Part shown: positions 6,626-50,793 of the stretch, one piece after another
Numbering within the stretch: the first letter of the stretch is position 1
How the letters are laid out: each line of letters starts with the position of its first letter
Source of the DNA: Selaginella moellendorffii
Taxonomy: Eukaryota > Plantae > Lycopodiophyta
Length of the DNA: 50,793 nucleotides
Direction: 5' to 3'
Assembly: GCF_000143415.4 (NCBI RefSeq)
Contig: NW_003314278.1
Span: forward strand, 1,098,122-1,148,914
Notes under the pieces: model-generated
Databases searched by the model: none
The model's input: only the letters and a program-made list of their open reading frames with translations
What the model was told of the DNA's origin: nothing
Program-made: the position numbers and the translations under genes

Positions 6626-8140
6626 ACTGTTCATCATAGTTGGAGCAGAGGGAAAAATGTCACCGTATTTCGTGATGAACCAGCTGATTCTGGACCTAGG
6701 TCTCTGATCAAAGAGCCAAATACCAACTGCAAATTTGCATGTGAAGAGGTGTTCAAGCATGTCCACGGGGTTTTCATTGCATAGAATACATAGAGTTTTG
6801 TGAACTGTGAGCCAATCACCAACAGGGATGCTGTCCTGCACAAGAAGCCAGCTTACCTTAGCTTCCACCAGTGTCTTCCACATGTTCACAATGTACTTCT
6901 GATTCTTCAACTTTCGCATAAGCTTGGTGTCAATTTTATCCATCAAAAGCTCTCTGCCATGCTTAAACCTGTACATAAAAAAAGACACACTGAACTCATT
7001 ACCTTCCCAGGATAACTGAGCCGGATCCTATATAAGATCAGATATAGGTACTTCCCAAACTAGTGTATTGCAGAGCATTCTCCCAGTTCAGTTCAGTGTA
7101 TTTCCCTCTCTGATGTATCGTCCTGATCCTTTTACCGAAGGCCATCCTGGGAACTGGGACCTCCTCAGGAACTATACATGGAAACAGTGCACCACTGTTA
7201 TGGGATAAAAAACAATACCTTGAGGTGATGGGGTTGTTTCCATAACAAAGATGATTTGAGTCTCAGCACCATCAAGCATTATCCAATCACGAACCTCGAT
7301 AACTTCAGTTTGTAAAGCAAGATGAAGGCGATCACAAGCGATGCTGCCTTAAGCTTTGATGTGGAGTTTTCATCCTGGGTTGTAATGGGTTGTCATGAGG
7401 CCATGTTTGCTCCAAGCGGACGTTAAACAAATACCTGACTTTACCTTTTTCATTGTATCATAGCTTGTCCACTGCTGAGGAAGAAAAACAAGATCCCAAC
7501 AAGAACTTTGCTGTAAGTGATGGCTTGCTAGCTCTTTGTAGATCCAATAAGTCTTTGATCGAAGCCTATGCCACCTAGGCCAAAGATCTCCAGCTGAACA
7601 GTCACCTATATACTGTTGATTACTGTTCTTATGCGCTACGTTGAAGAACAAGCGATCAGCTAATGCCTCTGTCAGATGGTCTGGTTCTTTCTGACTTAAC
7701 CTGGGTAGGAGTGACTTCCATATCTTCAACATCTCTTTTGCTATTCCATCCTGGACCTTCTTTGTGTTGAGAGGAGCAGTGCCAATCGATTCCTTGTTTC
7801 TAGTTACCACCTTGTCTAGGCAAGATCTTCTGTAGCTGAGCTCTGAAGAGGAGGTGCCAGGTTTTGTGGATATAAACCTGACACAAGCACTTTGAAGAGA
7901 AGAGCTTTGGATTAAATTTCTGGTGTGGCACATTCCGAATAACTGAATTCCACTCTACTTTTGCCCGGACTTTGCACCTGCTGGAGTTTCTAAAGTTTCT
8001 ACATATGTCGTTGGTGATCAAGTGTTGGTGAGTTATCGGGTGTTGTGGATCCAAGGTTTTTGCTGTGTAGGTCCTTATCACGTCGTCCAACAAGTTGGTC
8101 CACAAATCTATGTGGTGACACTCAATGCACAACGTCAAGA
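6626..8140 (-). mobile_element. LINE ORF2 3' fragment (zf-RVT), decayed
   Basis: CILCNENPVDMLEHLFTCKFAVGIW CCHC zinc motif typical of plant L1-clade ORF2; broken ORFs 7370-8150. Confidence 0.7.
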
Positions 8141-8143
8141 GAA

Positions 8144-8189
8144 GATCCATGTGAAGCGGTTAGCTCGATCCATGTGAAGCGGTTAGCTC
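8144..8189. repeat. 23-bp perfect tandem duplication
   Basis: gatccatgtgaagcggttagctc x2. Confidence 0.85.
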
Positions 8190-8949
8190 AATATTGTGTG
8201 TGAACAGATTGATGTAAGGATTCTACCATATATTCTATAGTAGATATAGATAAACTCAACAAGATTGGAATACACTAACTTTTTAATAATAATAAATTAA
8301 CAAATTTTTAATGTGTATTTATGGAGCCCACAAGAGTAGGAGTGAGGTGTTATCATATTATGAATCCCACAAGATCAAGAGTGAGAGGTGTTAATCACAT
8401 TATTTATATGCTCCATATGATCCTGAGGTTTAGGGGGCCCAGGTAAGTTAGAGGAAGGAAAAAAAAGAATTAATTAGAGTTATTGTGAAATTAGAGTATA
8501 AATGTGAGTTAAGAGTTAACACGAGCTAAGAGCAAAAACGTGACGTAGCAGCTTAAAAGAGGGAACTAGGAATGCTGGGATGGAGTTCCACCAGGTAGAA
8601 AAGACAAGTCATACCTCAAGCCTCGGATTGCTCCCAACCCCCGGTTGCCTACTTTAACCAAGCCCCGAACCACCCAGCCGTCTTCAGGGATGACATCAGC
8701 CCTAACCTCTTGCTCCACTGCTCCTACTTCTGAGCTGCTAGCAGCTTCTCCCCTCCTTAAAAAAAAGGTCTGTTGTTCTCTTGGAGTTCAAGAGGCATCC
8801 TCTTCACCGTCTCCTCTGTTTTTGCTAGCTAGTTAGCTCTTACAAGAAGGAGCACAAGCCAAGTTCAGCTCCATGCTCAGCTCTATCATCTCCTCTTTAA
8901 GACACCTCACCTCTTTGAAGCCATTCAGGAGAGCTAGCACGCTTCACGT

Positions 8950-9381
8950 CTAGACGTCCCCCCCTTTTTTTCTTTTTGCGATTGTCTCTTCAAACTCATC
9001 ATACTTATTTAACTCACCAAACCTTACCAAGCCGAGTGCAGGTTTTGAAACCCCATGAGTCACCTTGGCCTTTTTCCATCTTCCAGTTGAGCTCTCCAAC
9101 AATCTTGATGTGCGGATGCGTGCAAACTGCTCCTTGAGCCAGGACCATTTCTCCAGGAGATAACTTATGCTACAACACTCTCCACTCGATGATCTCAATG
9201 TGGAAAGATCCACAGAGCTGTCCCACTCATCATAGTTGTAGAAGAAATCATCCTCATACTGCATCTGCAACCTTGCTCGAGCCCAAGCCTCCACCATCGC
9301 AAGCTTCTCCCTCATCTTGATCAGCTCACACTTGAGGCGGCAAAACAAGTCCAGGTCCTGAGGAACAACAATGGAATACAC
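8950..9381 (-). other. Uncharacterised ORF or gene fragment
   Basis: 143-aa ORF; no family recognised. Confidence 0.25.
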
Positions 9382-10042
9382 CTTTCCCGGGTACCTGTCT
9401 CGAAACCTGTGAAAGTACAGTGGACGATGTGGTGTTTCAGATCACAGCGGAATGATAACTTGATGAAAGCAACAAAACCATTGAGCTCGCTCTTTGGGGA
9501 TCAATTATCATCTCCTCCTTTGAAGCAATGAGCAGCAGGCCTTGATCGCATCCAGAAGTACTAGAGATAGTCTGCAAAAGCAAGTTTGACACCAGTTATT
9601 TTGGCAACACAGAAGAAAAAGGAGAAAAATAAACTCAAGTTTCAAAATTTATAGAGATCCATACAATCCAAAATCCTCCATGAACTTAATGCCGCTTTCA
9701 GCACCTCCAAGCTCTGCTGAAAAACGTAGCCACGGTATGCCACAATCGTTTGCTTGAAAATCTGAAGATGTCAATCGAAGCATGCAAGCAAAAACATGAA
9801 GTAAAGAAGCGCAGGTGGACAACAAAGGAGATAAACTGAGCAAGGCCAAGAACACATATAAGGACTGAATGTAAGCACGTGAGGCCTCGCGTGGTTTTTT
9901 CCTCCGTGTGTGGCTTCATGTGCGAAGAGTTTGGTGTGGTAAGGTATGTTGTGGAGCAGCCAGAAGCCCAGGGTGAATATAAGTACGTGAGGCCTTGTGA
10001 GGTTTTACCACCACCCGAGGACTCCTGTGCATGGGCCCCGGG

Positions 10043-10578
10043 CAAGAGTCATTTGCGAAAGTGTTCTGCATGAAACTGGTGCCCTGAGGCTTCTGGCCGT
10101 GTAGCCCCATGAAGAGCATTTTTTATTTAATTTGTGTAGAGTGTGGTTTATTTTTGCATATTGAGTGTATCGATATCTTTTAGTTAGCAGATTATATTGA
10201 AGAACTGACTACCTACAGTTAAGTGCATGCAGCAACAGATCATATAAAAAATGAATGCAGAGAATAACAAATCGGGATTCTAGGAAGTTCGTGTTGTTAG
10301 TAATAATAATAATAATCATAAAAACCTGATGTTCAGCCAGTTAGAAGATTGTCTGAAAATTATGCATGTACTGATTCTTCAGCTGTGACATTGTAAAGTT
10401 TAAAAAGGAAGAAAAAACAGAAAACACGAGCTTTTTACTACTACAGTTAAGTAATAACAAATCGGGATTTCTAGGGTATGCATGTGGTGCTAGGGTTTGT
10501 GTGGTGTGTGTGTATCTCAACAATCTCATGCAGTGGAAAACGTTTTTCAGGGATCCCACTTTCTGGTGGGACAACAGG
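10043..10578 (+). repeat. Duplicate of the PPR gene upstream region and first PDF-motif codons (paralogous to 14612-15049)
   Basis: Near-identical blocks (gagtcatttgcgaaagtg..., (taa)n, ...gggatcccactttctggtgggacaacagg). Confidence 0.85.
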
Positions 10579-10582
10579 TTGG

Positions 10583-13500
10583 GAGCTTCGATCAAAGACT
10601 TATTGGATCTACAAAGAGCTAGCAAGCCATCACTTACAAAGTTCTTGTTGGGATCTTGTTTTTCTTCCTCAACAGTGGATGTCTGCTTGGAGCAAACCTG
10701 ATAGCCTCATGACAACCCTGACACGAACCACTGAAATATTTTAAGAATGTTCTATGGCCTGTGGGATTTAAGGCTGTAATGCCTCAAGGGTTGGGAGGTT
10801 GGCCTAGGGTTCACTCTCTTGTTCATTTCATTGGTATCGGAGCAACACATTCTTTTGGGGATGGCGGGTGAGCAAGGTATTGATCTTGATAAAGACTATG
10901 GTGTTAGTGATGATAGTCATGATGATGCGGAAAAGACTCTTGATGATGTCGTTGTGCAGCAAGGATGCCAGATTTCTAAGGTTCAGAGTGACATAAAGAA
11001 GGTTAAGGATTCTGTCAATCTCATTAAGGATTTCTTGTTTCACATGGACCCTCAAGGGTTGAATCGATCTCATGTCCGTGATTACCATTGGTACATCAAA
11101 CATGTTAAGGATTATGGTATCGTGGAATGGAAATCATCACCAAATGTTTGTGATAGTTAAGAGGTTGATTCTTGGTTGGAATTGTTGGAAAATTGTTGGT
11201 TTTATAATCTTTGTCAGGATAAGGTGAAGATAAATTTTTTTGTGACGAAGCTTATGGGTCATGTTTTTTCGTGGTGGAAGAACTACATCAAAGCTAATCC
11301 AAAGCTAACTTCTTGGACTAATTTGACAAAGGTTTTCTGCACTTCATTTGTCAAGAAGTTTGAAGAGGTTGGTCTCATAAACCAACTGTTAGAGATCTAG
11401 TAAAGGACTTTGTCTTTGGATGCGTATGCCCGCAAGTTCTGCGATCTTTGCCTTAGTTTCACGGGCACTTATATGAATTGTTAAAGGTGCAATGTTTCAT
11501 TAAAGGATTGAATTCTGTGGATGTGCAATAGAAGGTCAAGAAGGATTTTCTAGCAACATTGACTGATGCTATCACTAAGGCTTAGATCTTTTCGCCCGAA
11601 CTGTCAGTAAACTTGGTCAACTCTGGTCAACGAGATGGTCTACGGAGTAGTCAATGTGATGACCAGCTCACCAATGCTTCATATTCGGGGAAGAAACTAT
11701 CTTTATTTTGTTGTGGCTCGAAGCATGAAGATGGCAGTGAGGCTAAGAAACTTCATTTGGACTAGTGAGAGAAGGACAATGTGGAGGGCAATTGTTTTCG
11801 TTGCCGCAGGGCTACATATTAGAGCAAAGATTGTTTTGAAGGGGTTAATGAATGATAAGATGATTGTGGTGGAAATTATAGGCAATGATGTGAGTGATAG
11901 TGTTTTTGAGGCTGTATTGCTTCAAGTTAGGCATTCTCTCATAGTCATAAGCCATAAGTTTGATGCCACATAGTGGAATTGACCTACTCGAGAATGGCAA
12001 TATTATCTATATGGATTGGACTTCCATATAGATTCAAATCATCAATCTCTCTAGATATGGATCTTCGAGGCCGTTTTGCTCGTTGGCAAGAGTTCCTGCA
12101 GGAAATGTTTATTAAGATCCAGTACAAGCATGAAGATGACAATAAAGTGGTTAATGCATTATCTAGGATGGTAAATTTTATCTCGTTCGTGAAGCTATCC
12201 AACAATCTCTTGGATGAGCTTAAGGAGTTTGCTGACTTTGACTCTTTTATCACTGATATTCGTGTGAAGGTTTTGTTGAAGGACGCCTCTACAGATTTGA
12301 AGGGTGACAAGTTTGCGTCATTCTAAATACAAGATAGAATCCTAGTGAAAAAGGGACGTGTAGTGGTTCTTCATGTTGCTAAACTCATTAAACAGATTTT
12401 AGTCACATAGAATGTTGGATGAATCTTTAAGCTAACTAGTAAGTCCAAAGGGTATATAAGATCCCCCACATGCTGTATAATTGTCCAAGGTCCACAATAC
12501 CGTGGAAACAATTTAGCACTGCCACCTCCTTTTAGAGACCATTGTGCATCCAATAGCTTAAGGAAAACCTTGTCACCAACTTTGTATTCTTGATGATGAT
12601 GATGCTTATCACCCAATCTTTTGTCTTGCTCTTGAGCTTGCCTTATGTTCAACTTTGCCAACTTAAGCTTGTCTTGCATATCCTCCAGGAAATCATAAGC
12701 ATAAGGTACCCGAAACAAAGCCAAATTCAAACTCACAAAAGACTTAGGCTCATAGCCATACATCACCATAAAGGGAGAGCCAATAATTGATAGATAATAG
12801 CAAACTGAAGCAAAGGCAAGTACTTTTCCCATACTCTTTATTGAGTCAAATTTCCCACAAAAGACCTTAGCATATCTTTTAATAACTAATTCATACGCTC
12901 TATCTACCCATTAGATTGTGGATGCTCACCACTACTTATGCTTAGCTTAGTCTCTAGCTTCTCAAAGACCGTTTGCCAAAACTTAAACGTGAACTTGGGA
13001 TCCTAATCACTTACAATGTCACTCGGCAAACCATAGAGACTGAATAACTGGTCTACAAATAACTAAGCAAGTTCAGAAGCATTTATCATCATCTTCATAG
13101 GGAAGAAGTAAGCCATCTTCGTCAAGTGATCCACAACAACCCAAATAGCATTATTTCCTCAAAAAGTTTTGGGCAAATCAACTTTGACCGCCTGGTAGGT
13201 CAAACAACCACATATGTACTTCTCAACATCTGATTTCATCCCAGGACAAAAGAAATGCCTCTTCACCAACATATACATTCTCAATAACCCCAGATGCCTA
13301 GCACTTGGCACATCATGACACTCAAGCAAGCTTAAAGCATGTTTGCACTCTAGTGATATCATGGATCAGTTCATCATCCAGGTCCCAGAGATTGATGCAG
13401 AGAAGGCTGGTCCAGCCAATATTCTTGCTCAAAGATTGGTGAAAACATACTAGAAGACAACTAAAGAGTTGTTAGTTCAGTGGAATGGTTATTCCATGGA

Positions 13501-24945: not shown

Positions 24946-25546
24946 TGCGGCGATTGTTCAGAGACACTGGCGGGGGCCCCGGGAAGAGTTATCTTTTCTT
25001 TTTAACAGCCTGCCGACCCTAAAATCGGTTCAACCGGAGATAGGGTCTCACAGCTGGCAGAGCACCGCACGTCCTGTGGTGTCCGGTGCACCCTCGGCGG
25101 TCCTTGAAAATCTGGAGGAGCAAGTGCTGAGCTTGCCCAGTCGTACTCATAACCGTATCAGGTCTCCAAGGTGAGCAGACTCTAGTTGATGGAACAATGT
25201 AGGTAAGGGAAGTTGGCAAATGGATCCGTAACTTTGGGAAAAGGATTGGCTCTGAGGGTTGGGCTTAGGGGTGTGTGGCTTGACCTTGTAGGCTGCTGGC
25301 GGTCTGCCTGAGCTGCTTGTGTGGCAAGGGCAGGCCACGGCGTGCCGACCTGGTGATGGACACAGAACACCCCTCCCCGCAGGGGGCATTCCCTAGGCAT
25401 CGAACAACTGACTCAGAACTGGAACGGACAAGGGGAATCTGACTATTTAATTAAAACAAAGCATTGTGATGGTCCCTGTAGATGTTGATGCAATGTGATT
25501 TCTGCCCAGTGCTCTAAATGTCAAAGTGAAAAAATTCAACCAAGCA

Positions 25547-25581
<35 letters not shown>

Positions 25582-25746
25582 AGTAGCCAAATGCCTCATC
25601 ATCTAATTTGTGATGCGCATGAATGGATTAACAAGATTCCCACTGTCCCTATCTACTATCTAGTGAAACCACAGCCAAGGGAACGGGCTTGGAAGAATCA
25701 GCAGGGAAATAAGACCCTATTGAGCTTGACTCTAGTCCAACTTTGT
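24946..25746 (+). rRNA. 25S/26S rRNA internal fragment (into domain V), degenerate
   Basis: ggcgggagtaactatgactctctta(a)agtagccaaatgcc, cccactgtccctatctacta, aagaccctattgagcttgactctagtccaactttgt. Confidence 0.95.
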
Positions 25747-27803
25747 TAAACGGGGCTTTTATTCACCAAAAAAACCAACTCTAGGCTGAGTTTCGTTAAG
25801 GCATGAAACCAGCAAAGAGCCGCGACAGAAAGTTTCATTGTGCACGAAACCAACAAAGAGCAAGAAGGGGGGTCTTCATGTGGAGGTACTTTGTAGAGAA
25901 CTCGTCGCAGACTTTTATCTCAAGCCATGGTCTTGAGTAGAGCCAGCAGAAAGATGATGGGAGAAGCTCCAAGTACCAAGGAACCAACCTTTACGACTTG
26001 AGAGTGGAGTTGCTGAAGAACTTGTCTCTCTTGATCCCTTAAGGAGAAACTCCAGGTGCCAAGGGGTCAGTCTTAAGAGGGGAATTGCTCACAAGCTTAA
26101 CAGCCCATGCTATCGCGATTGTGGAATCCAAAACCATCTGTCCAGCGGCGTCCACAATCACTTATGAGTACTTGCTTCTCTTGATCCCCTCAAAGGGCAT
26201 GCCTTACACCGTCTTTGTGCCTCGTTGAGTCTCTGAACTGAAGTGTATCTAACCATAAGTATTTTTTGAAACCTTGGAGGTACCCCATGGACGTACACCG
26301 CTCTCCCTTGGTTTCTTCTTGTGCACTTTCATATCTGCCCCCCACTGTAAGCGTCTGATGATCGGACCCTATTGAGACTCAGTACCATCTTGTCGCTCAT
26401 CGGTGTTGAGTGCTCTTGTTGGTGCCTTTGCTCTGGTCCATGTCTTTATCTTGAGTGTCTTCGTAGCTAGGGCCAAAAAACTCGTTCATCGTGACCACAC
26501 TAAACACCCTCAATTGTCATAGAGAAGTTGGATGTTTGCCCAAGTGTTGGTGACGAAATCCTCCTCATGTGGGGAGCCTTGTTTCCAAACCTCCACTATT
26601 GTCGACCTTGAAGAAGCCCACAAAGAGAACCACCTCCTTGAGAAGTCATCAAGATCGACAAACTTGAAGCAAGATCGCGTACGACACCATCACTTCAAGC
26701 TCCCAATCCTTGGGAAGAATCTCCTTACAAGTCTTGGGGATGAAAAGGATCTCCTTCACCTTGCTTGAGTTCACCACTGTCCATGGAGCAGGCCTCCAGA
26801 CCCCCAGAAAGAAAACCGTGGAGTAACGAAGGACAAGTCTAAGCAATAAGCCGAGGACTCAAATACTTAGATCTCCTTACTCCACCGTTTGATCTTCCTG
26901 AAATTCTGAAGGCCGACTCTCCATATCCAGCTCCAACTTCTTACCGACGTGATCTCGAAACGAGTGCATCAGCCAGGAGAACCAGCCGCTTGAACTTACA
27001 CTGGACTTCACTTGAACCACGAAACTTGAGCAGACAGATCTTGCAGCCCAGCTGTTAGATCTTCGTGAAACCTTGTAGGCGCAATCTCCCTAGCGTCTTC
27101 TAGCTTCTTACCAGAGCGATTTTCAGTCCAATGGCACGTAAAGCAGCCACAGCTGACCCATTCTCGCCTCAAACCTTAGCCACCCAAGTGCCTAGGATCA
27201 CTTGTATCTTCCTAGGTCTTTATCCAAACGGCCTGCTGCTAGTGACAGAGTGTCTTTGCCTTGTAGAACCCCAGCTGTGGAGAAGAAAAGAGAAGCACAG
27301 CCAGTGATGAGTGCCAGACGCTCAAACTTCCACTGGCCCATACTTGCTTGAACCGTGAACTTCAAGCAGATGGATCTCGCAACCCAGCCGTTATTTCTTC
27401 TTGAAATCTTGTAGGTGCAGTCTCCCTGATGTCTTCTAGCTTCTCACTGGAGCGATCTCAGATCGGATGGCGCATATAGCAGTTGCAGCCAACCCTTGCT
27501 CACCCCAAACCTTAGCCGCTGACATGACTAGCGCCACTTCGATCTTCTCAGATTTCAATCCAAATGGCCTGCAGATAGTGACAGAGTGTTTCCTTGCATT
27601 GTAGGAGCCCAGCCGTGGATAGAACAGAGAAGACCAGCCAGTGATGAAAGCAAAACAAAAGATCTTTCGATGAAGTGCCCAATATTGCTTGTGCCTTCGA
27701 TTCTTGAGGGGGTGCCTTTATTTAGCAGCTCACATGACTCCTACATACTAGATCTGGCCACAGAAGTCGACTCTCAATGCACCATCTCCTCCTCTTCGTC
27801 TAG
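25747..27803 (-). mobile_element. Unknown 2.06-kb non-coding insert in 25S rDNA; probable non-autonomous non-LTR element
   Basis: Flanked by identical ctctagtccaactttgt (25730-25746, 27804-27820); left-end motifs shared with the adjacent LINE; internal ~335-bp duplication; no long ORF. Confidence 0.7.
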
Positions 27804-27820
27804 CTCTAGTCCAACTTTGT

Positions 27821-30071
27821 CAATGGGGTTTTAATTTATCCTCTATAAACCATAGAGTCCGATTTTGACCTACTCGAAACCGGGAAAGAGTTCTTCAAGA
27901 TTTTTAGGGGGGGTGGGACGAGGGGGACAAAGTAGAACTGGTACTCGAGTCCTTGACATCCAATCTCCAAGCTTCCGAAGTTCCTGGTGTTGAACTCTGT
28001 CGACTCGGGGAGGTACACGTACCGTCGTTGCTGAACATGTGCTGCCAAATCCATATTGGTGGTTTCCACGTCCATTCTTCTTCTCCAGCCTCACTTCTTC
28101 CTCTAAAAAATGACCACAGCTCCTTCTCCTTTGCTATCTTCCCTTCCTCGCCTCGTTTGATCAGCGTGTCCAGGCGGGCCGCAAGTGAGATGATCAATCT
28201 GGACCAAACCTTTGAGATAGTTGCTCGAGCTGAGGGGTCCGTGTCATCGAATAGTTTGGCGCAGCGAGCCTTCCATATCTCTGCTAGTGTGCATCCCCGA
28301 AACGCATTGAAGAGCTCCTGGTGGAGATGCTTAATGTGTGTCCAAGTTTGGTTGAGTTGATCAAAGTGTGGGGCCTCGTTGTGTCTCCACTTCTATGCAT
28401 CAAGATTCTTTATTTTTCCCTGGATGAAGCTACCCCAGAGCACTGATTCGTATGTGATTGCAGCTCCTCTGGTTGACGTTTGTTTGAGTACCGTTGCTGC
28501 ACCTTCCCATACTTCTTGTGCTGCTGGACATTCCCATAAGATGTGTCACTGTGTTTCTATGGTGCCACAAGTCTTGCAGGCTGTGTTCGGGAGATGTATG
28601 GCCGCCAGAGAGGGAAGATGTTCTTGTTGGGCCAGCCACATGAAGTAGCGGTTCTTAGCTGACCAGTGTCCCTTCCAGATCTTGTTGATGCAATGTGAGT
28701 GGTTCCTGGAGTGGATCTGTTGGGCCTTTGCTTTCTGGATGAGGGAGGATTGAGTCAGCACCCTGATCAGTTTTCGGCCCAGCTTGGTCTTGTACTGGAA
28801 GAAGTCCTTGCACATGGTTCCTCTCCAATGCCACTCTGTGGGATCCCACTTGAGTTCATCCAGGGTTTGTTGGTGGAACCAGTAGAGGCGAGCATATTGT
28901 TTTTCTGGGATCAATGGATTAACGTTGGCAGTTTTTTTCTCCATTTGAATCACTCTGATCGGTTTAGCTCTGCTTATATCGGGGAGGTCCTAGTACTCAA
29001 GGGTGACAATGGGGTATAAGCATCCAGCCTGTCCTGCCTCAAAGATTAGTCCCAATGCCATATTGGGGAGGGCACATACAATCGACTTGTCCACCTTCCA
29101 CCATTGATGGTATTGGTCTTCTTGCAGGTTTAGTCGTTTAAGGCATGTGTGTTTGGCTGCTAAAAAGGCTGTCTGGAATTTACGCATCCTGTGTTCCGAG
29201 ATGGTTAATCTGTAGAAGGCACTGATTTGGTCATAGTTGTTGGCCGTCTGGTTGGGCTGGATCATGGTGTCTGCCTCTGCAAAGGTTCTCATCCTTGCTC
29301 TGTGTAGGTCTCTACATGTTTGGTCCAGGCCGCGATCCTCTGAAGCTCTGAGCATTTTACCTTTGACAGCGAAGAGTTTGCTCAAGAAAATTGGCTGCTG
29401 GTCCAGTTGTTCTTTGGTACGAGGTGGTTTACGTTCCAGCTTGCATTTGAATTGACTCCAGAGCTTGAACAGCTTTCCTGAGAACATGTGAGCCTTTGTC
29501 ATTTTGAGTTTGGTGTCCAAGAAAAGCCATTGTTCATCTGTTGCCCAGTTTTTTCTGGTGTGCTCGTTCTTGTCTAGGAGGACTTTTAAAAGTTATGCTC
29601 ACAGGAGTGTTCTCCAGGGTTGGTTGCCAGGCATGAGCATCCTCGTGAAAATCTTGAAGAGGAGAGCCTTGCATTGTTCTTCGATGTCAATAATATTGAG
29701 GCCCCCTTCGTGCTTCGGAAGTGTTCTTGACCGCCAGTTAACCTTTGCTCCACCACGTGAGATGCAGGAGGAGCCTTTCCAGACATAGGTTCAAATGAGT
29801 TGGTTCATTTCCTGGATCGTTCGCCTGTCCATGTTCCAGCATGCTGCCAGGAACCAGATTGCTCCAAGCAAGATGCTGTTTGCCACCACGCAGCATGCTG
29901 AGAATGATAGTTTTCTGCTCACCCAGAACTTGAGTTGATCCCTTAGTTTTGTAACTGCTTTTTGGTTCTGAGGTTCTGGATCATATTGGCGTCCGACTTG
30001 GAATCCAATGTAGCGGGTGGTCTCCTCCGTGTCAAGCCATTTGAAACCCAGCTCCGTGCCCCATGTTGGAG
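27821..30071 (-). mobile_element. 5'-truncated LINE copy 1 (RT C-terminus, zf-RVT, 3'UTR)
   Basis: Homologous to 30302-32545; bounded by target motifs 27804-27820 and 30072-30087. Confidence 0.9.
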
Positions 30072-30087
30072 TCTAGTCTGACTTTGT

Positions 30088-30285
30088 CAATGGGGTTTTA
30101 ATTAATTTATCCTCTATAAAAACATAGAGTCCGATTTCGACCTACTCAAAACCGGGAAAGAGCTCTTCAAGATTTTAGGGGGGGTGGGACGAGGGGGACA
30201 AAGTAGAACTGGTACTCGAGTCCATGACTTTCGATCTCCAAGCTTCCGAAGTTCCTGGTGTTGAACTCTGTCGACTCGGGGAGGT
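30088..30285 (-). mobile_element. Severely 5'-truncated LINE copy 2 (~200 bp 3' end)
   Basis: Same 3' terminus as copies 1 and 3; bounded by tctagtctgactttgt and tctagtccgactttgt (30286-30301). Confidence 0.9.
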
Positions 30286-30301
30286 TCTAGTCCGACTTTG
30301 T

Positions 30302-33300
30302 CAATGGGGTTTTAATTAATTTATCCTCTATAAACCATAGAGTCCGATTTCGACCTGCTCGAAACCGGGAAAGAGCTCTTCAGGATTTTTAGGGGGGGTG
30401 GGACGAGGGGGACAAAGTAGAACTGGTACTCAAGTCCATGACGTCCGATTTCCAAGCTTCCGAAGTTCCTAGTGTTGAACTCTATCGACTCGGGGAGGTA
30501 CACGTACCGTTGTTCCTAAACATGTGCTGCCAAATCCATATTGGAGGTTTCCACATCCATTCTTCTTCTCCAGCCTCGCTTCTTCCTCTAAAAAACGGCC
30601 ACAGCTCCTTCTCCTTCGCTATCTTCCCTTCCTCGCCTCGTTTGATCAGTGTGTCCAGGCGGGCCGCAAGTGAGACGATCAATTTGGACCAAACCTTTGA
30701 GATAGTTGCTCGAGCCAAGGGGTCCATGTCATTGAACAGCTTGGCACAGCGAGCCTTCCATATCTCTGCTAGTGTGCATCCCCGAAGTGCATCGAAGAGC
30801 TCCTGGTGGAGATGCTTAATGTGTGTCCAGGTTTGGTTGAGTTGATCAAAGTGTGGGGCCTCGTTGTGTCTCCACTTCCATGCATCAGGATTCTTTATTT
30901 TTCCCTGGATGAAGCTACCCCAGAGCGCTGATTCATAGGTGATTGCAGCTCCTCCAGTTGATGTTCGTTTGAGTACCGCTACTACACCTTCCCATACTTC
31001 CTGTGCTGCCGGACATTCCCATAAGATGTGTCGCTGTGTTTCTGTGGCGCTACAGGTCTTGCAGGCTGTGTTCGGGAGATGTATGGCCACCATAGAGGGA
31101 AGACGTTCTTGTTGGGCCAGCCACACGAAGTAGCAGTTCTTAGCCGACTAGCGCCCCTTCCAGATCTTGTTGATGCAATGTGGGTGGTTCCTGGAGTGGA
31201 TCTGTTGGGCCTTTGCTTTCCAGATGAGGGAGGTTCGAGTCGAGTTTTCGGCCCAGCTTGGTCTCGTACTAGAAGAAGTCCTTACACGTGGTTCCTCTCC
31301 AATGCCACTCTGCGGGATCCTACTTGAGTTCTTCCAGGGTTTGTTGGCGGAACCAGTAGAGGCGAGCATATTGTTTTTCCGGGATCAATGGATCAACATT
31401 GGTAGTTTTTTTCTCCATTTGAATCACTCTGATCGGTTTAGCTCTACTCATATCAGGGAGGTCCTCGTACTCAGGGGTGATGATGGGGTACAAACGTCCA
31501 GCCTGTCCTGCCTCAAGGATTAGTCCCGATGCCATGTTGGGGAGGGCGCAGACAATCGACTCATCCACCTTCCACCATCGATGGTATTGGTCTTCTTGCA
31601 GGTTTAGTCGTTCAAGGCATGCGTGTTTGGCTGCTAAAAATGCTGTCTGGAATTTACACATCCTGTGTTCCGAGATGGTTAATCCATAGAAGACCCTGAT
31701 TCGGTCACAGTTGTTGGCCGTCTAGTTGGGCTGGATCATGGTGTTTGCCTTTGCGAAGGTTCTCATCCCCGCTCTGTGCAAGTCTCTGCATGTCTGGTCC
31801 AGGCCGTGATCCTCTGAAGCTTCGAGCATTTTACCTTTGACAGCGAAGAGTTTGCTCAGGAAAACTAGCTGCTGGTCCAGTTGTTCTTTGGTACAAGGTG
31901 GTTTACATTCCAGCTTGCATTTGAATTGCCTCCAGAGCTTGAACAGCTTTCTTGAGAATGTGTGAGCCTTTGTCATTTTGAGTTTGGTGTCTGAGAAGAG
32001 CCATTGTTCATTTGTTGCCCAGTTTTGTCTGGTGTGCTCATTCCTGTCCGGGAGGACTTTCAACAGTTGTGCTCGCAGCAGTATTCTTCATGGTTGGTTG
32101 CTAGGCATGAGCATCCTCGTGAAAATCTTAAAGAGGAGAGCCTTGCATTGTTCTTTGATGTCAATAATACTGAGGCCCCCTTCATGCTTCGGAAGTGTTA
32201 CTGACTGCCAGTTGACCTTTGTTCCCCCTCGTGAGACACAGGAGGACCCTTTCCAGACGTAGGTTCAAATGAGTTGGTTCATTTCCTGGATCGTTTGCCT
32301 GTCCATGTTCCAGCATGCTGCCAGGAACCAGATTGCTCCAAGCAGGATGCTGTTTGCCACCACGCAACGTGCCGAGAATGATAGGTTTCTACTCGCCCAG
32401 AACTTGAGTTGATCCCTTAGTTTTGTAACTGCTTTTTGGTTCTGAGGTTCTGGATTATACTGGCATCCGACTTGGAGACCAAGGTAGCGGGTGGTCTCCT
32501 TTGTGTCCAGCCATTGGAAACCCAGCTCCGTGCCCCATGTAGGAGGTCTGCCAGGGGGGAGCCTTAGTCCTACCGTTTTGTGCCAGTTTATTTTTTATCC
32601 CATGGCCTCATTGAAGAAGTCCAGGTCCTTTTCGACGTTTGAGAGGTTCTCAGGTGATCCCTCCATGATCAGGCTTGTGTCATCTGCAAAGGCTGATGAT
32701 AGGAGGTCCTCCTTTGAGGCTTCGTTCATGTCCCGGAGAGCGGAGCCACAGCCTGGAAGGGGCATACCTTTCGGGCCCTCTGGTCGGGCGAGGTAGTAGG
32801 CCAGAGCATCCGCAACGAACAGGAATAGGTATAGTGCGAGGGGGCAGCCTTGGTGGACCGATCTTTCAAGTTTGAAGGGCTGTCCCATGGTTTTGTTGAT
32901 TGTAACCTTGCTCGATGGCGAGTGGTACAGGGACGCTGTCCATTCCACGAACTGCAGAAGGACTCCTTGCTTGATCATTATGGCCTAGAGAACTTTCCAA
33001 TCCACCTGGTCGTAAGCTTTTTCAAAGTCCAGGAGAATGATTGCAATCTGCTCGGCCATGTCTTTGGTGTGTCCTTGTGCCAAAAGGACTGTTAGGAGGT
33101 TGTCCACAATTTGCCTGCCATCCACGAATCTGTTCTGTATCTCCTTGATCGTTTCGCAGGGGCTTGAGGCGTGATGCCAAGGCTTTTGCTACGATCTTGT
33201 ACATGGTGTTCAGCATAGAGATGGGCCTCTAGTTCTTGAGGTGGGACATATCTCCTTTTTTTGGTATCAGCGCAATGATCCCATCCGTAGCTCCTTCCGG

Positions 33301-34620
33301 CCACTTCCTGGTTCACATGGTTTCTTGCCACATCTTGAGAACTTCTGGTCCAATCCATTCCCAGTTTTGTTTATAGAAAGCTGGTGGCATGCCATCCTCC
33401 CCTGGCATCTTGTCGTCCTTGAGGTCATCCAGGGCGTCCTTTAATTCTCGCAACGTGAAAGGTCTCATTAGTCTGGTGTTCATTGCCGGGGTGTACTTGG
33501 TCGGGATATGCTCTAGCACTTGTTCAAGTTTCTCTTGCCTGACCTTGTCCCATGGTTCCTCCTTGAAAAGCTGGGAGTAGTAGTGTTTTGCCATGTTGTG
33601 CATGTCGTTGATCTCTGTGTGCAGTTGCCCTTGTTCATCCTTCAATCCGAACATTGGTGGGGAGACCACTTTAGATCTTATGGATCAATAGAACTCCCTA
33701 TTCAGCGCAAGCTCGCTTGCATGCCATCTGATGTGTCCTGCTTTTAGGAAGGGTTCCATCTTGTCAGCCTCTATCCTTTCCAGTTGGCGCTTAACTTGGA
33801 TTTTTTGAGCTTGTAGCCACGGGTCATCTGGGTTATTGCAAAGGTCTGTGTTAATCGAGGTTAGGACTCTCCAGACCTTTTGGATTGTGTTAAAGACACC
33901 TCTCTTATCTTTCTGGATCTTGGTTCAAGCCTCCTGAGCGAGTTGAAGGGTGAAGGAGTGTAGGTCCCCCTTGTGTTTTTTCCATTTCTCATGCGCCCGG
34001 TTATTGTTGGCTTGCTCCTCAAAGAACTTCTTGGGTGTGGCAACTGGCTTCCTTGGGCCTCTCGATTTTTGAAAGGGAAGTGTGAGTCTAATTGGATGGT
34101 GGTCCGAGAAGTCCGTGTAGGTGTTGTTGATGTCCAACTTTCCCCCTTGCATGCACAGGTCCATGGTGAGGTAGAAGCGGTCCAGACGATGTTGTATGCC
34201 TCTGCGTTGACGTTCTTGCCATGTGAAGCACAGTTCATGTGTCACGAAACCTGGGATCTCATAAGTGTCGCAGGTTCCAATTTGTAAGAGGAACGAGTTC
34301 CATGCAAGGCGTTCCGCACGTGTACATCTATCCTGGATTATGCCTCCCCGTTTATCCTCCTCGTGGTCCACGAAGTTGAAATCACCGGCCAGGATCCAAT
34401 CATCGATTCCAGTTGGAAGACGACGCTGCAGAATTCGGAAGAAGTGTGCTCGTGAGGTGGAGCGGGATGCTGGGGCGTAGATGTTCAGTAGGCCTATGGT
34501 TCGGGCATTTACTTTTATCACTATCATGTGAGCACGTCCAGTGATTAGGATGTGGTGCGAGGTGCCTAGGGATTGCCATGGTCCTTTAGCGATGATGAGG
34601 GTTCCTCCTCGCCGCAAATT
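30302..34620 (-). mobile_element. LINE copy 3: L1/Tx1-clade ORF2 (APE endonuclease, RT, zf-RVT), decayed, 5' end missing
   Basis: NIYAP, AGDFNF, FTW..RLDRFY, SDHHPI (33925-34617); PGEDG, MLNTMYKIVAKALASRL, QGCPL, AFADD; CKTC..ETQRHILWECP. Confidence 0.93.
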
Positions 34621-34839
34621 GGTCCTTTCTCAACATAAAAGATAATGTTTTGCCAAGCTTACCACAACCACTGGCAACCTTGATTGCCAATGATGTTGTC
34701 CTTGGCTATGGTATCTATAACTATACATCTAGGGCCAAAGTTACACCACCAATGGCCCATAGCAAGCACAGCCATGGTGGCACAAGGTCTTGGCCATGGC
34801 TAGCACTACCTTGGCTGGCCTTAGCCGTGGCATAGCCAT

Positions 34840-35240
34840 CTACTAGAGGAGCTAGAGGAGAGCTGTTGTAGGAGGAGTGCTAGAGGAGTTGGAGGAGAGC
34901 TGTTGCAGGAGAAGTGTTGGAGGAGCTGGAGAGCTGTTATAGGAGGAGTGCTGGAGGAGCTGGAGGAGACTCAATGCACAAGGGGTTTTGGAGGAGCTAA
35001 AGGGTGAGAAAGAATGATTTGATGAAAATAAAAAAGAAATTGAAAAATCCAAGAGTAGGATTGGCAAAAGTACAATGTGGAAGAGAGTTGTTGCAGGAAG
35101 AGCACTACAGGACATGGAGGAGAGTTGCTACAGGAAGAGTGTTGGAGGGAGGAGATATGTTGCATTGGAGGAAAGTAAGAGCCACTAGAGGAGTTGGGCA
35201 CTAGAGGAAAATAAAAGTTGCTAGGTGGAGAGTTGGGCAT
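34840..35240. repeat. Degenerate GGA/GAG-rich low-complexity repeat
   Basis: ggaggagtgctagaggagttggaggagagctgttg units. Confidence 0.7.
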
Positions 35241-48212: not shown

Positions 48213-50656
48213 TTTGTAATCGGACACTCGGCTTTTATACTCACTTTCCTGTTCCTGGGCATTCGCCAGTACCACAAGGTTCCTACCTTGTCCATGCAGG
48301 GCTACCACGAACCGATTGAACCAATCCATTCCAAAGATCACGTCAAATCCCGCCATGTCTAGCACAGTGAAATCCATGTTTACTTTCCATGTCCCTACTT
48401 CGACTCTCACTTGTCGAAGTACCTCATCAGTGCTTTGGTTACCTTGAACAAACTCTATAGTCCTTGGTTCGCCTAGCCGCTGCACCGTTAGTCCGGCTTG
48501 CCGGACTATGTCTACAGCCACAAAATTATCCGAAGCACCCGTGTCAATAAGGATCTTAACAAAGCTACCTCTGAGCTTCCTTCGAAGGGCTAGTAGATGT
48601 CGCGAACGACTCTCTACCAAAGTTGCTCGTGTAATGAGTAACTTTGAGTTAGGGATTAGATCACATACCTCAATTTGGACTTCACCCGACTTGATGACTA
48701 TATTCTGGCCTCTGGCCTTCTTCGAGTAGGGACATTCCCTCGAAAAGTATCCCGCTTCACCGCAGTTGTAGCATATGTTGTTTCCCACGCTGCTATACGA
48801 TTTGACCTTCTTATCCGTGGGTTTGTCTTTTTTCGCTTGACTCCCCCACGTACTCGCTTGCTGGGCACTGAATTTGCCTTTCCGGAACCCCGAAGACTCA
48901 TTCTTAGAGAAACTCTTCTTGAATTTCCCTCTGCTATACGTTCCTCTTGGATTGGCCCCTTTGCTAAACATGGATCCCGACCCCGTCGTGTTCCCCTTTC
49001 ATAGGTTATCATTGAAATGCACCTTGATGGCCGCATCCAACACTTCCTTGTAGTTGGTTTCAGCACATCACCTCACCGCGAGCCCAGGTTTGCAAACCTG
49101 ATATGAAGGCATGGAACGCATCCATATCCCCCATGTCCGTGACAAGTATCGTCTTTTCCATGAACCCATTCACATATTCCTGGATGGTTCCAGTCTGCTT
49201 CAGCCTACTCAACTCATCTCTCAGATGTAGAGTGGCATTCGGAGGAATGTATGTTGCACGGATCCTCGCCTTCATCATGTCCCAAGTGGCCACTGGTCCT
49301 TCGTTGGCCTCCGTCGTTCTCCACCAAGACTTGGCATTATATTCCAAGTATGGTTTTGCACATGGGACCTTCTCCGAGCTCGGTAATCGCAACGCTCGGA
49401 AGTAGTCCTCTATATCGTAAAACCAATCCTCCACCACCTTATAGTCATTCACTCCCTTGAAGACCGGTGGGGGCTTTGGTTTGTACTTGGGAACTGCCTG
49501 AGGGACTGATTCTACTTCGGTCTGTTTGACCTTGTTTGGTTCTGCCTCAGTCCCTGCTGAAGGGTCTGCACCTTCTGTGCTGCCAGCATCCGCAGTCTTT
49601 CTCTTTTTCTTCTGCTTTTCATCACGCTTTAGCTTGCGTACGAGAGTCTCCAGCAGGGCATTGGTCTGTGCCAACTGTCCTTCTAACACATTCAATCGAG
49701 CCTTGGACGACCGAACCTCGCCACCAGACTCCTGTTTGGAAGTTTCCTCACTAGAGTCCTCCTCATGCAAGGATTCCTCACCCATAGCCTCTTGTTCGAC
49801 TGGAGGCTCCAGCTCCGGCGGAAGTTCCGTCTCCGCCTGGGTTTGCTTACGCCCTGCCCTTGCCATCTCCCAGCAATCCGCCTCTATCTTTCGCTAGAAC
49901 TGGGGAAAAGGCTCCGATACCAAATTGTAAGCCACAAATTTTTCCTTTCTAATTTGCCAACTTACCTCGTCTATCCGACCTCCACTGCCTTGGCTTGTGC
50001 TAAGTTCCCTTTCCAAGGTTCTCGCCTATTGTACCAGCTCCTACTTGGTCCTACTTGCTTTCAGCTACTCACTGCATGAGCAACAGAGTGTTAGCCATCC
50101 ATCTACGGATTCCCAAATCTCTCCCAATCCCCCTCCCCGGGTTAGACTGGACTTAAGGTTCGGCTACACTCCCCACAAGCACAAGCAGCCAAGCACACTA
50201 AGCCTCTAAGTTCCTAACACCCCTTGGTACAACAAGACTTGATCATGGGACCCTCTAAATCCCAAGCCTTGGGTGCAGCACTTGCTTCGGGACATCGGGG
50301 CGAAACACCGTGGCCTAACGGCCCGGTATGGGTACCTCTACCCCCCCACTTCCATCCTGAAGGGAAGGCCCAAGCCCCTAGGAAGGGCGAGGACCAATGA
50401 GCCGCAAGGTACTCAAGTGGGGCACCACTCCACATGAGCCGGGAGCACCGCAGTCGGTTTCCCTTTCGGGAGTGGGAGCTGCTCTTGAACACTTCCCTGG
50501 GTGGCCCCTCCGGCACCACCCAAGCCCATGCTCACTCCCACCCAAGGCCCCTCGGTCCCAGTCCCAACCTCAAGTCAGTTTGGGAGCCCCACTGGAGAGT
50601 CCCTTCTAAACTGGTTCCTGGACCTCACTATCCCTACTATACTTTTGGAACCCCCT
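48213..50656 (-). mobile_element. Ty3/gypsy element 5' portion (LTR, PBS, gag, zinc knuckle, protease), 3' truncated
   Basis: gag 49060-49866; CYNCGEAGYFSREC; ILIDTGASDNFV; tRNA-Met PBS 49911-49922 (rc tggtatcggagc); LTR from 49926. Confidence 0.9.
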
Positions 50657-50793
50657 TGTAAGGAACCAACTCGCCGAGGTGTCGTACGCTAAAGGAACCC
50701 CGAAAGCATGACCAAAATGACAAAGAGTTCATCGGATGGGACCAAGTCAAAGATGTTCGAGTCCAAGACCGACTCTAGGACCGAGTTCGAGAT

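What the first reader, a model, noticed from the sequence alone, without database searches (positions are those of the whole stretch)
25730..34620. Candidate 25S-rDNA site-specific LINE inserted in tandem, antisense, at one domain V target
Seen: 25S homology stops at ...gagcttgaCTCTAGTCCAACTTTGT (25746). The same 16-17-mer recurs at 27804-27820, 30072-30087 and 30286-30301, each time joining the variably truncated 5' end of one insert to the fixed 3' end of the next. Three inserts are copies of one APE-RT-zf LINE (2.25 kb, 0.2 kb, >4.3 kb) with no poly(A) tail. Knowledge: 5' truncation plus TSD is the signature of target-primed reverse transcription. Tandem arrays separated by target duplications occur for insect R1, and sequence-specific APE LINEs exist in the Tx1 and R1 clades. 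The R2 (~25580) and R1 (~25650) sites are present here but empty; this site is ~165 bp downstream of the R2 site and is used in antisense orientation. Inference: a plant rDNA-targeting LINE family that nicks near TTTGT/GAAA. I do not know of a described land-plant equivalent but cannot search. The distal TSD and the downstream 25S are absent from this window.
Basis: partly seen in the sequence, partly recalled or inferred. Interest (0 to 1): 0.93.

Follow-up and report, generated by a model that had tools for sequence, protein, structure and literature searches.

The report
Spikemoss LINEs homing to 25S rDNA
A decayed ribosomal RNA gene copy of the spikemoss Selaginella moellendorffii carries four retroelement insertions stacked backwards at one exact nucleotide, and other loci show the same, so a plant L1-type jumping-gene lineage strongly prefers, but is not restricted to, one site in the large-subunit rRNA gene.

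Summary
25S homology ends at 25746 in a 17-mer, CTCTAGTCCAACTTTGT. That 16-17-mer ("T") recurs at 27804, 30072 and 30286. Each copy joins a truncated 5' end to a fixed, tail-less 3' end.

The genome is Selaginella moellendorffii. Inserts B, C and D are dead copies of one APE-RT-zinc-finger LINE (family F1). Insert A is a non-coding element whose 3' end resembles a second family (F2).

I examined 16 3' junctions in the window and ten other loci:
- 11 carry the full T.
- 3 of those run on into 25S.
- 7 lead into differently truncated next units.
- 4 F1 copies lie outside rDNA and keep only ACAA(AG).

One non-rDNA copy has a clear ~47-bp duplication. Its nick site, TTGT|GAA, resembles the 25S site. 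T is therefore target-derived, and homing is a strong preference, not an absolute rule.

F1 and F2 sit beside angiosperm L1 elements, not Tx1 or R1. One F2 copy at the T site has intact ORFs.

I found no paper describing a plant rDNA-homing LINE. Craig et al. 2021 describe a Penelope-like rDNA-homing element in spikemosses.

This scan has already noted the same system on other pieces of this genome.

The parts
24938..25746 (+). Decayed orphan 25S rDNA fragment (Rfam LSU model about 1640 to about 2442) that ends at the insertion site. It is part of a scrambled 5S/18S/25S pseudo-unit.
   Evidence: Rfam hits at 24938-25125 and 25190-25692. Alignment to the 25S of L007 and L009 runs up to 25746. 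5.6% of positions are changes private to the window, mostly G>A.
25730..25746 (+). T1: the 17-nt 25S target sequence CTCTAGTCCAACTTTGT in its native 25S context. The inferred first-strand nick lies after 25746.
25747..27803 (-). Insert A: a 2057-bp non-coding element. Only its last ~80-110 nt resemble the family F2 3' end. It is a putative non-autonomous partner.
   Evidence: No tblastn match to the F1 or F2 ORFs; 78% identity to the F2 3' end over 81 nt. It shares the 3' hairpin.
27804..27820 (+). T2: a 17-mer identical to T1. It lies between A's 5' end and B's 3' end.
27821..30071 (-). F1 copy B. It is 5'-truncated at position 2096 of D and covers the RT C-terminal part, the zf-RVT domain and the 3' UTR. 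It is broken by stops and frameshifts.
30072..30087 (+). T3: a 16-mer, TCTAGTCTGACTTTGT (CpG changed to TpG).
30088..30285 (-). F1 copy C: a 198-bp 3' end only, truncated at position 4142 of D.
30286..30301 (+). T4: a 16-mer, TCTAGTCCGACTTTGT, the undecayed 25S sequence.
30302..34613 (-). F1 copy D: 4312 bp, 5'-truncated inside the APE domain. It contains APE at 34099-34613, RT at about 32472-33267 (FADD at 32679-32690), zf-RVT at about 30992-31126, and a tail-less 3' end. It has many stops and frameshifts. Its 5' end abuts unrelated DNA.
30345..30367 (-). Conserved 3'-UTR hairpin (9-bp stem) of copy D. The same hairpin is present in B, C, A and all F1 and F2 copies examined.
   Evidence: Alignment A1, columns 30-38 paired with 45-53. 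93% of cells are paired and 4 pairs show compensatory changes. Slid controls give 19-54% paired.

Best explanation
The window holds an orphan, decaying rDNA unit of Selaginella moellendorffii. Its 25S gene was hit at least four times, at one nucleotide, by retroelements that use target-primed reverse transcription.

Shown:
- Two related L1-type LINE families (F1 and F2, about 70% identical in the RT) and a non-coding element that shares their 3' end all join their fixed, tail-less 3' ends to ...CTCTAGTCCGACTTTGT.
- All of them are antisense to the rRNA.
- Successive units are separated by a 16-17-nt copy of that 25S sequence and have different 5' truncation points.

Inferred mechanism:
1. The element's APE nicks the rRNA-sense strand between TTTGT and GAAATG.
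2. The freed ...TTGT-3'OH pairs with ACAA(AG) at the RNA's 3' end and primes cDNA synthesis. A conserved 3'-UTR hairpin is probably the RT's handle, and it lets the non-coding element A be mobilised in trans.
3. The second strand is cut 16-17 bp upstream. This duplicates T, so the target is regenerated on both sides.
4. Each new T copy can be hit again, which builds head-to-tail arrays.

The specificity is a strong preference, not an absolute rule. During the same burst, F1 also landed at non-rDNA sites that share only the nick motif TTGT|GAA.

Inserted rDNA units are dead and decay together with their inserts.
For: Anatomy in the window.

Genome identity: (99% match to SELMODRAFT_412222).

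Independent loci:
- F2 3' ends abut the same 16-mer with 25S continuing beyond it in L007 and L009.
- L010 holds a mixed F1/F2 array with T at every joint.
- L002 holds an array with T joints.

Census of 16 3' junctions:
- 11 carry the full T.
- 3 of those continue into 25S.
- 7 lead into units with distinct 5' truncation points.

T is not an obligatory element tail:
- L001, L004, L005 and L006 keep only ACAA(AG).
- L005 has a ~47-bp TSD that begins ACAA. Its pre-insertion site reads ...TTGT|GAAC on the primer strand.
- A T-to-G variant of T (GCTAG...) is shared by three joints of one array, next to both F1 and F2 ends. The variant is therefore locus-specific, not family-specific.

Other CTTTGT or TTGTGAA sites exist in the 25S but are unused.

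Star-like F1 tree: rDNA-linked and dispersed copies are the same age, and B and D are not sisters.

Coding capacity:
- L009 F2 has ORF1 of 749 aa with a CCHC knuckle.
- Its ORF2 is stop-free with APE, RT (FADD) and zf-RVT domains, and the APE catalytic residues are conserved.

3' hairpin covariation.
Against: - No insert was seen with 25S on both sides and a complete TSD pair. D's distal junction is with unrelated DNA.
- By locus, 4 of 7 F1 loci are outside rDNA.
- The L002 and L010 arrays have no recognisable rRNA next to them.
- L007 and L009 may be copies of one insertion, because both abut a gypsy LTR end at the 5' side. However, the elements differ by 11% while their 25S flanks differ by 4.4%.
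- The identical CCAAC variant in T1 and T2 is weak evidence. About half of the CpGs in this fragment have decayed (my estimate is p~0.16).
- The 25S sequence just downstream of the nick (GAAATG...) comes from my memory of plant 25S, not from a tool.
Confidence: 0.75

Rival explanations
1. The 16-mer is carried by the element itself, either as a 3' tail or as a short 3' transduction from a master copy sitting in rDNA. Arrays then arise by RT template jumping between read-through RNAs or by self-targeting. On this reading there is no endonuclease-level recognition of 25S.
For: - T always sits directly after the 3' end.
- ACAA(AG) follows every copy, even outside rDNA.
- L002:9042 carries 10 nt of T and then unrelated DNA.
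- The L002 and L010 arrays lack an rRNA context.
- No complete TSD pair with both 25S flanks was seen.
Against: - Four F1 copies lack T beyond 4-6 nt.
- In L005 the ACAA lies inside a clear TSD, so it belongs to the target.
- F1, F2 and A have different terminal sequences yet the same T.
- T variants track the locus, not the family.
- In three cases T continues seamlessly into several hundred nt of 25S, in units that keep 5S/18S/25S or 5.8S/25S order.
Confidence: 0.12
2. The elements have only a short nick-site preference (TTGT|GAA). The 25S site is hit repeatedly simply because rDNA is present in hundreds of copies.
For: - The L005 off-target site shares only TTGT|GAA.
- F1 copies occur at four unrelated loci.
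Against: - The 25S 5' part alone holds other TTGTGAA and CTTTGT sites on both strands, and CTTTGT occurs about once per kb in the loci. Even so, every rDNA-linked junction is at the same nucleotide.
- Two families that differ by ~30% in the RT use the identical site.
- 11 of 16 junctions are at T, although the assembly under-represents rDNA.
Confidence: 0.08
3. A single ancestral insertion in one rDNA unit was multiplied by unequal crossing-over and segmental duplication. There was no repeated targeting.
For: - L008 and L010 share an identical end structure and are duplicates.
- L007 and L009 share a 25S flank and an LTR flank.
Against: - At least seven different 5'-truncation/T joints exist: D positions 877, 1718, 2096, ~3958 and 4142, F2 position 5800, and A. 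Recombination cannot create these.
- B and D are no closer to each other than to copies on other scaffolds.
- Three element types are involved.
Confidence: 0.05

Closest known systems
R1 elements of insects (R1 clade, APE-type, 28S-specific)
   Same: - APE-type LINE without a poly(A) tail.
- Inserts at one nucleotide of the large-subunit rRNA gene with a fixed-length TSD (14 bp in R1, from my knowledge).
- 5'-truncated copies occur, and tandem arrays are separated by the duplicated target.
- Inserted units are inactive.
   Different: - The site is different, about 85 bp downstream of the R1 site at the start of domain V.
- The orientation is antisense, so co-transcription with rRNA is impossible.
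- The lineage differs. The RT tree, the PDB sequence search and the APE fold all point to L1, and R1Bm EN is not among the top 50 fold matches.
- Specificity is leaky.
Tx1-clade sequence-specific LINEs (Tx1L, Keno, Mutsu and others; Kojima and Fujiwara)
   Same: - L1-superfamily APE LINEs with sequence-specific insertion into repeated genes.
- They use target and RNA 3'-end homology.
   Different: In my tree, F1 and F2 sit with environmental relatives beside angiosperm L1 (SH-aLRT 87), not with Aedes Tx1-3 or the fish element. Sampling of curated references was limited. The Tx1-clade targets I recall are not this 25S site.
Plant L1-clade LINEs (for example the Vitis and Gossypium LIb-type elements found)
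   Same: - Domain order is APE, RT, then a CCHC (zf-RVT) domain.
- ORF1 has a CCHC knuckle.
- The nearest named relatives are plant L1 elements, and the nearest solved structure is human L1 ORF2p.
   Different: - There is no poly(A) or A-rich tail.
- A conserved 3' hairpin suggests the 'stringent' type of RNA recognition.
- There is a strong preference for one 25S site.
PLE-X (Chlamys-clade Penelope-like elements) of S. moellendorffii and S. tamariscina (Craig et al. 2021, PMC8557442)
   Same: Same genus, and targeted insertion at a precise 28S/25S position. The authors call these the first known plant TEs with this habit.
   Different: PLE-X is an unrelated element class: a telomerase-like RT with no endonuclease. 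Its 28S position could not be read here, because the supplementary figure is not held.
R2 elements (RLE-type, 28S-specific)
   Same: An rDNA safe-harbour lifestyle, TPRT, and 5' truncations.
   Different: R2 has a C-terminal restriction-like endonuclease, a single ORF and sense orientation, and its site lies ~159 bp upstream. Similarity of F2 ORF2 to R2 proteins is far weaker (E 1e-13 to 1e-16) than to L1 ORF2p (E 2e-42).

Membership tests
Target-specific APE LINE (in the sense of R1 and Tx1-clade elements) | Independent insertions at the same nucleotide of a repeated target | tested here: met
   11 of 16 3' junctions are at T. At least seven have distinct 5' truncation points. Three element types are involved, across four or more scaffolds.
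Target-specific APE LINE (in the sense of R1 and Tx1-clade elements) | Nearly all copies reside in the target | tested here: not met
   For F1, 4 of 12 junctions (4 of 7 loci) lie outside rDNA without T. For F2, 3 of 3 are at T, but the sample is small and two may be duplicates.
Target-specific APE LINE (in the sense of R1 and Tx1-clade elements) | A constant TSD flanking an insert that has the target on both sides | tested here: inconclusive
   16-17-nt T copies flank A, B and C, but the distal 25S was never seen. D's 5' end abuts unrelated DNA.
Target-specific APE LINE (in the sense of R1 and Tx1-clade elements) | The endonuclease cleaves the target sequence specifically | not testable with these tools
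   This needs recombinant APE and a 25S oligo. Only conservation of the catalytic residues was shown.
L1 clade (plant L1-type) | N-terminal APE, RT and C-terminal CCHC domain in ORF2; ORF1 upstream | tested here: met
   In L009, Exo_endo_phos covers residues 77-314, RVT_1 covers 589-857 and zf-RVT covers 1286-1354. ORF1 is 749 aa with a CCHC knuckle.
L1 clade (plant L1-type) | RT groups with L1 elements in a phylogeny | tested here: inconclusive
   F1 and F2 are sister to angiosperm L1 (SH-aLRT 87, unstarred) and apart from Aedes Tx1-3. The best PDB sequence match is human L1 ORF2p, and the APE fold is closest to L1 EN. No curated L1, Tx1 or R1 reference set was available.
L1 clade (plant L1-type) | Poly(A) or A-rich 3' tail | tested here: not met
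   All F1 copies end ...AAAACCCCATTG and F2 copies end ...CCCCGTTTA.
R1 clade | Insertion at the R1 site of 28S in sense orientation | tested here: not met
   The R1-site sequence at about 25640-25670 is uninterrupted. The elements are antisense and lie ~85 bp downstream (the site was placed from memory).
R2 clade | C-terminal restriction-like endonuclease, no APE | tested here: not met
   An APE domain is present at the N-terminus.
PLE-X / Chlamys Penelope-like elements | Penelope/telomerase-like RT with no APE | tested here: not met
   The elements have an L1-type RT and an APE.

The most novel reading that the evidence does not exclude
Selaginella harbours a still-functional native plant L1-type LINE, family F2. 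The copy on GL377659 has intact ORF1 and ORF2 and sits at the T site. On this reading its APE recognises a ~16-bp 25S sequence, which would make it the first rDNA-homing LINE of land plants and the first such LINE outside the Tx1, R1 and early-branching clades. It works in antisense orientation from its own promoter, and it mobilises a non-coding partner through a shared 3' hairpin. A further speculation is that its nicks supply the 3'-OH used by the endonuclease-less PLE-X elements, which home to 28S in the same genus.
Probability: 0.25. Interest if true: 0.85.

Novelty: new variant of a known kind. Interest (0 to 1): 0.7.

Why it matters
Sequence-specific LINEs are textbook cases in animals (R1, R2, the Tx1 clade). 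Kojima and Jurka 2015 (PMC4640811) place nearly all of them in the early-branching, Tx1 and R1 groups. The only published plant TE that homes to rDNA is a Penelope-like element (PMC8557442).

A plant L1-type lineage that repeatedly hits one 25S nucleotide would show that rDNA homing evolved independently in plants, within the otherwise promiscuous L1 clade. This lineage also works antisense and has a leaky specificity with a readable nick motif. It would give a natural series, from on-target sites to TTGT|GAA off-target sites, for studying how APE specificity arises.

It is also topical. Avian R2 is being engineered to place transgenes in plant 25S rDNA (bioRxiv 10.1101/2025.08.22.671877; PMC13580325). 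A native plant element with intact ORFs would be an obvious alternative to test.

The arrays also mark dispersed, dead rDNA units, which is useful for understanding rDNA turnover in lycophytes.

Tried and rejected
- **Read census.** Afterwards I sent none of those letters to any search tool. Local scripts used pieces beside them or a masked copy.
- **HMMER search of 1.84 billion representatives with D's C-terminal piece.** It returned only 22 hits. All close ones were S. moellendorffii, so it gave no cross-species test.
- **Nearest non-Selaginella relative with DNA.** L011, an ENA contig at 36% aa identity, has an A-rich tail and no rRNA flank. There is no evidence that homing is conserved outside Selaginella. 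A second relative could not be fetched.
- **L003.** This is a third family (70% nt identity), but it is 3'-truncated and therefore uninformative.
- **Distal 25S or a 5' T copy upstream of full-length F2 and F1 copies.** I found gypsy LTR ends instead.
- **T1=T2 (CCAAC) as proof of duplication of an already mutated target.** I rejected this as weak, because about half the CpGs here have decayed.
- **3' transduction of 25S as the source of the orphan fragments.** I rejected this because the 5S-18S-25S order and strand are those of an rDNA unit.
- **Pfam on F2 ORF1, the linker and the C-terminal tail.** No extra DNA-binding domain was found.
- **Literature.** Nine searches found no plant rDNA-homing LINE. 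Repbase and Dfam cannot be searched here.
Full report
**Observation**

Rfam finds a scrambled rDNA remnant on the + strand:
- a 5S gene at 20320-20438;
- a heavily deleted 18S at 24336-24997;
- 25S pieces at 24938-25125 and 25190-25692.

Alignment to other Selaginella 25S copies carries the homology on to 25746. There it ends in CTCTAGTCCAACTTTGT.

The 17-mer recurs exactly at 27804-27820. It recurs with two mismatches at 30285-30301 (none expected in 100 shuffles). A 16-mer variant lies at 30072-30087.

After each of the last three copies comes the same sequence, CAATGGGGTTTTAATT... This is the reverse complement of a fixed element 3' end with no poly(A).

A self-BLAST defines the units:
- B, 27821-30071, equals D positions 2096-4339 at 91.3%.
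- C, 30088-30285, equals D positions 4142-4339 at 94%.
- D runs from 30302 to 34613.

On the minus strand, D carries a partial APE, an RT with FADD, and a zf-RVT domain. All are riddled with stops and frameshifts.

The first insert, A (25747-27803), is different. It is non-coding. Only its last ~80-110 nt resemble another family's 3' end.

Beyond D's 5' end there is neither a T copy nor any 25S sequence.

**Organism and relatives**

D's APE piece is 99% identical to SELMODRAFT_412222, so the genome is Selaginella moellendorffii. Through annotated protein fragments I fetched ten other loci of the public assembly.

Two families emerge.

F1 is the family of B, C and D. Its best copy, in L010, has a 1109-aa open frame, then one stop, then 295 aa.

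F2 is about 65% identical to F1 in nucleotides and about 70% in the RT. One F2 copy, L009 (GL377659), has full coding capacity:
- ORF1 is 749 aa with a CCHC knuckle.
- ORF2 overlaps it and is stop-free, with APE, RT (FADD) and zf-RVT domains.
- The APE catalytic residues are conserved.
- Its 5' UTR is cut off by a gypsy LTR.

**The test that matters: what follows the 3' ends**

Across the window and loci I found 16 3' junctions.

Eleven are followed by the full 16-17-mer T.
- In three, T runs on into several hundred nt of 25S: A in the window, and F2 in L007 and L009 (Rfam).
- In seven, T is followed by the 5'-truncated start of the next unit. The truncation points all differ: D positions 877, 1718, 2096, ~3958 and 4142, F2 position 5800, and A.
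- In one (L010, duplicated in L008), T is followed by 8 nt and a second T.

L010 is a mixed array: F1, T, an F2 fragment, T, F1, T. Three of its T copies share a private T-to-G variant, next to both F1 and F2 ends. The variant therefore tracks the locus and not the element family. This is what serial target-site duplication predicts.

One junction (L002:9042) keeps 10 nt of T.

Four F1 copies (L001, L004, L005, L006) lie outside any rRNA context and keep only ACAA or ACAAAG. Of these, L005 is informative. It is flanked by a ~47-bp duplication that begins ACAA. The pre-insertion site on the primer strand reads ...TTGT|GAAC, like the 25S site TTTGT|GAAATG (the 25S bases after the nick are from my memory of plant 25S).

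So the 16-mer does not travel with the element, and the element does land elsewhere.

Short motifs cannot explain the recurrence. Other CTTTGT and TTGTGAA sites exist in the 25S and are unused.

**Mechanism**

The data fit TPRT with these steps:
1. A first nick on the rRNA-sense strand, after ...CTTTGT.
2. Priming helped by 4-6 nt of homology (ACAA(AG)) at the RNA's 3' end.
3. A second nick 16-17 bp upstream.

The duplication regenerates the target on both sides of each insert. That explains the head-to-tail stacks.

A 9-bp hairpin about 50 nt from the 3' end is conserved in F1, F2 and A. 93% of cells are paired, four pairs show compensatory changes, and slid controls give 19-54% paired. This is the likely RT recognition signal, and the reason a non-coding element can share the site. 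The nick positions, the role of the hairpin and trans-mobilisation of A are inferences.

**Age**

F1 copies form a star phylogeny with terminal branches of 0.04-0.07. B and D are not sisters, and rDNA-linked and dispersed copies are the same age.

The window's 25S fragment carries 5.6% private changes, mostly G>A. L007 and L009 carry 2.4% and 2.0%. So the unit died at about the time of the F1 burst.

The shared CCAAC variant of T1 and T2 is only weak evidence for insertion into an already mutated target, because about half the CpGs here have decayed.

**Classification**

- In an RT-centred tree, F1 and F2 form a clade (100). That clade sits within a group of unnamed environmental sequences (100). 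The group is sister to angiosperm L1 elements (87) and apart from Aedes Tx1-3.
- The closest solved protein is human L1 ORF2p (E 2e-42, against 1e-13 to 1e-16 for R2).
- An AlphaFold model of the F2 APE (pLDDT 88) matches L1 EN best (TM 0.75-0.80).

These are therefore plant L1-type elements, not Tx1, R1 or R2. The atypical features are the absence of an A-rich tail and the 3' hairpin. The nearest non-Selaginella relative I could read has an A-rich tail and no rRNA flank.

**Literature**

Nine full-text searches found no plant rDNA-homing LINE. Kojima and Jurka 2015 assign target-specific LINEs to the early-branching, Tx1 and R1 groups.

Craig et al. 2021 report that endonuclease-less Penelope-like PLE-X families of two Selaginella species insert at a precise 28S position. 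They call them the first plant TEs with that habit. Their site could not be read here. The claim 'first plant rDNA-homing TE' therefore fails, but an APE-LINE with this habit appears undescribed. Repbase and Dfam were not searchable.

**Earlier scan notes**

The same system has been flagged on several other pieces of this genome, and two notes were followed up with similar conclusions. I used them only as leads.

**Limits**

- Occupancy of functional rDNA arrays, present activity and the distal junction therefore remain unknown.
- L007 and L009 may not be independent. L008 is a duplicate of part of L010.

Noticed in passing
window 20320-20438 (+), 24336-24997 (+): A 5S rRNA gene lies about 4 kb upstream of a heavily deleted 18S remnant. 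That remnant is fused directly to 25S starting at model position 1640. All are on one strand, so this is a decayed L-type (5S-linked) rDNA unit outside the NOR.
   Followed up: partly
L009 (GL377659.1:250474-272341) 5208-11953: An F2 copy sits at the 25S T site with ORF1 (749 aa, CCHC knuckle) and a stop-free ORF2 (APE, RT with FADD, zf-RVT). Its 5' UTR is replaced by a gypsy LTR end.
   Followed up: partly
L007 about 13085-15953 and L008 about 11223-13321: Two orphan 25S copies share a ~1.8-2 kb insertion between LSU model positions ~1170 and ~1220, near the GTPase-associated centre. It contains only small ORFs (two of 145 aa). Scan note s1-388291 may describe the same feature.
   Followed up: no
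L008 about 16950-16990; L002 15808-15823: The leader of a gypsy element, just after its tRNA-Met-type PBS (TTGGTATCGGAGC), contains a 12-nt match to the core of the 25S target (TAGTCCGACTTT). This could be chance (about 0.03 expected) or a decoy or off-target site.
   Followed up: no
L001 14287-14296 and L004 11249-11258: Two unrelated non-rDNA F1 copies share the 10 nt ACAAAGGGTA after the 3' end and then diverge. This is unexplained. It could be a 4-nt transduction, a target preference, or chance.
   Followed up: no
L006 7416-7485 and L008 9559-9628: F1 copies with different 5' truncation points (D positions 829 and 2980) abut the same repeat end (...AACGAAATAGAGCTT). Likewise, F2 in L007 and L009 abut the same gypsy LTR terminus (...TTACA) at different F2 positions. 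LINE 5' ends and this LTR or repeat end are joined recurrently.
   Followed up: partly
   Followed up: no
window 48252-50793: A gypsy retrotransposon piece, 90% identical to L001 6444-8850. A short inverted piece starts at 50657. Its LTR region has subrepeats that also hit window 1175-1347 and 22179-22286.
   Followed up: no
window 34820-35152: A degenerate ~34-37-bp tandem repeat (GGAGGAGCTG...-rich), a few hundred bp beyond D's truncated 5' end. It was found in none of the other loci.
   Followed up: no
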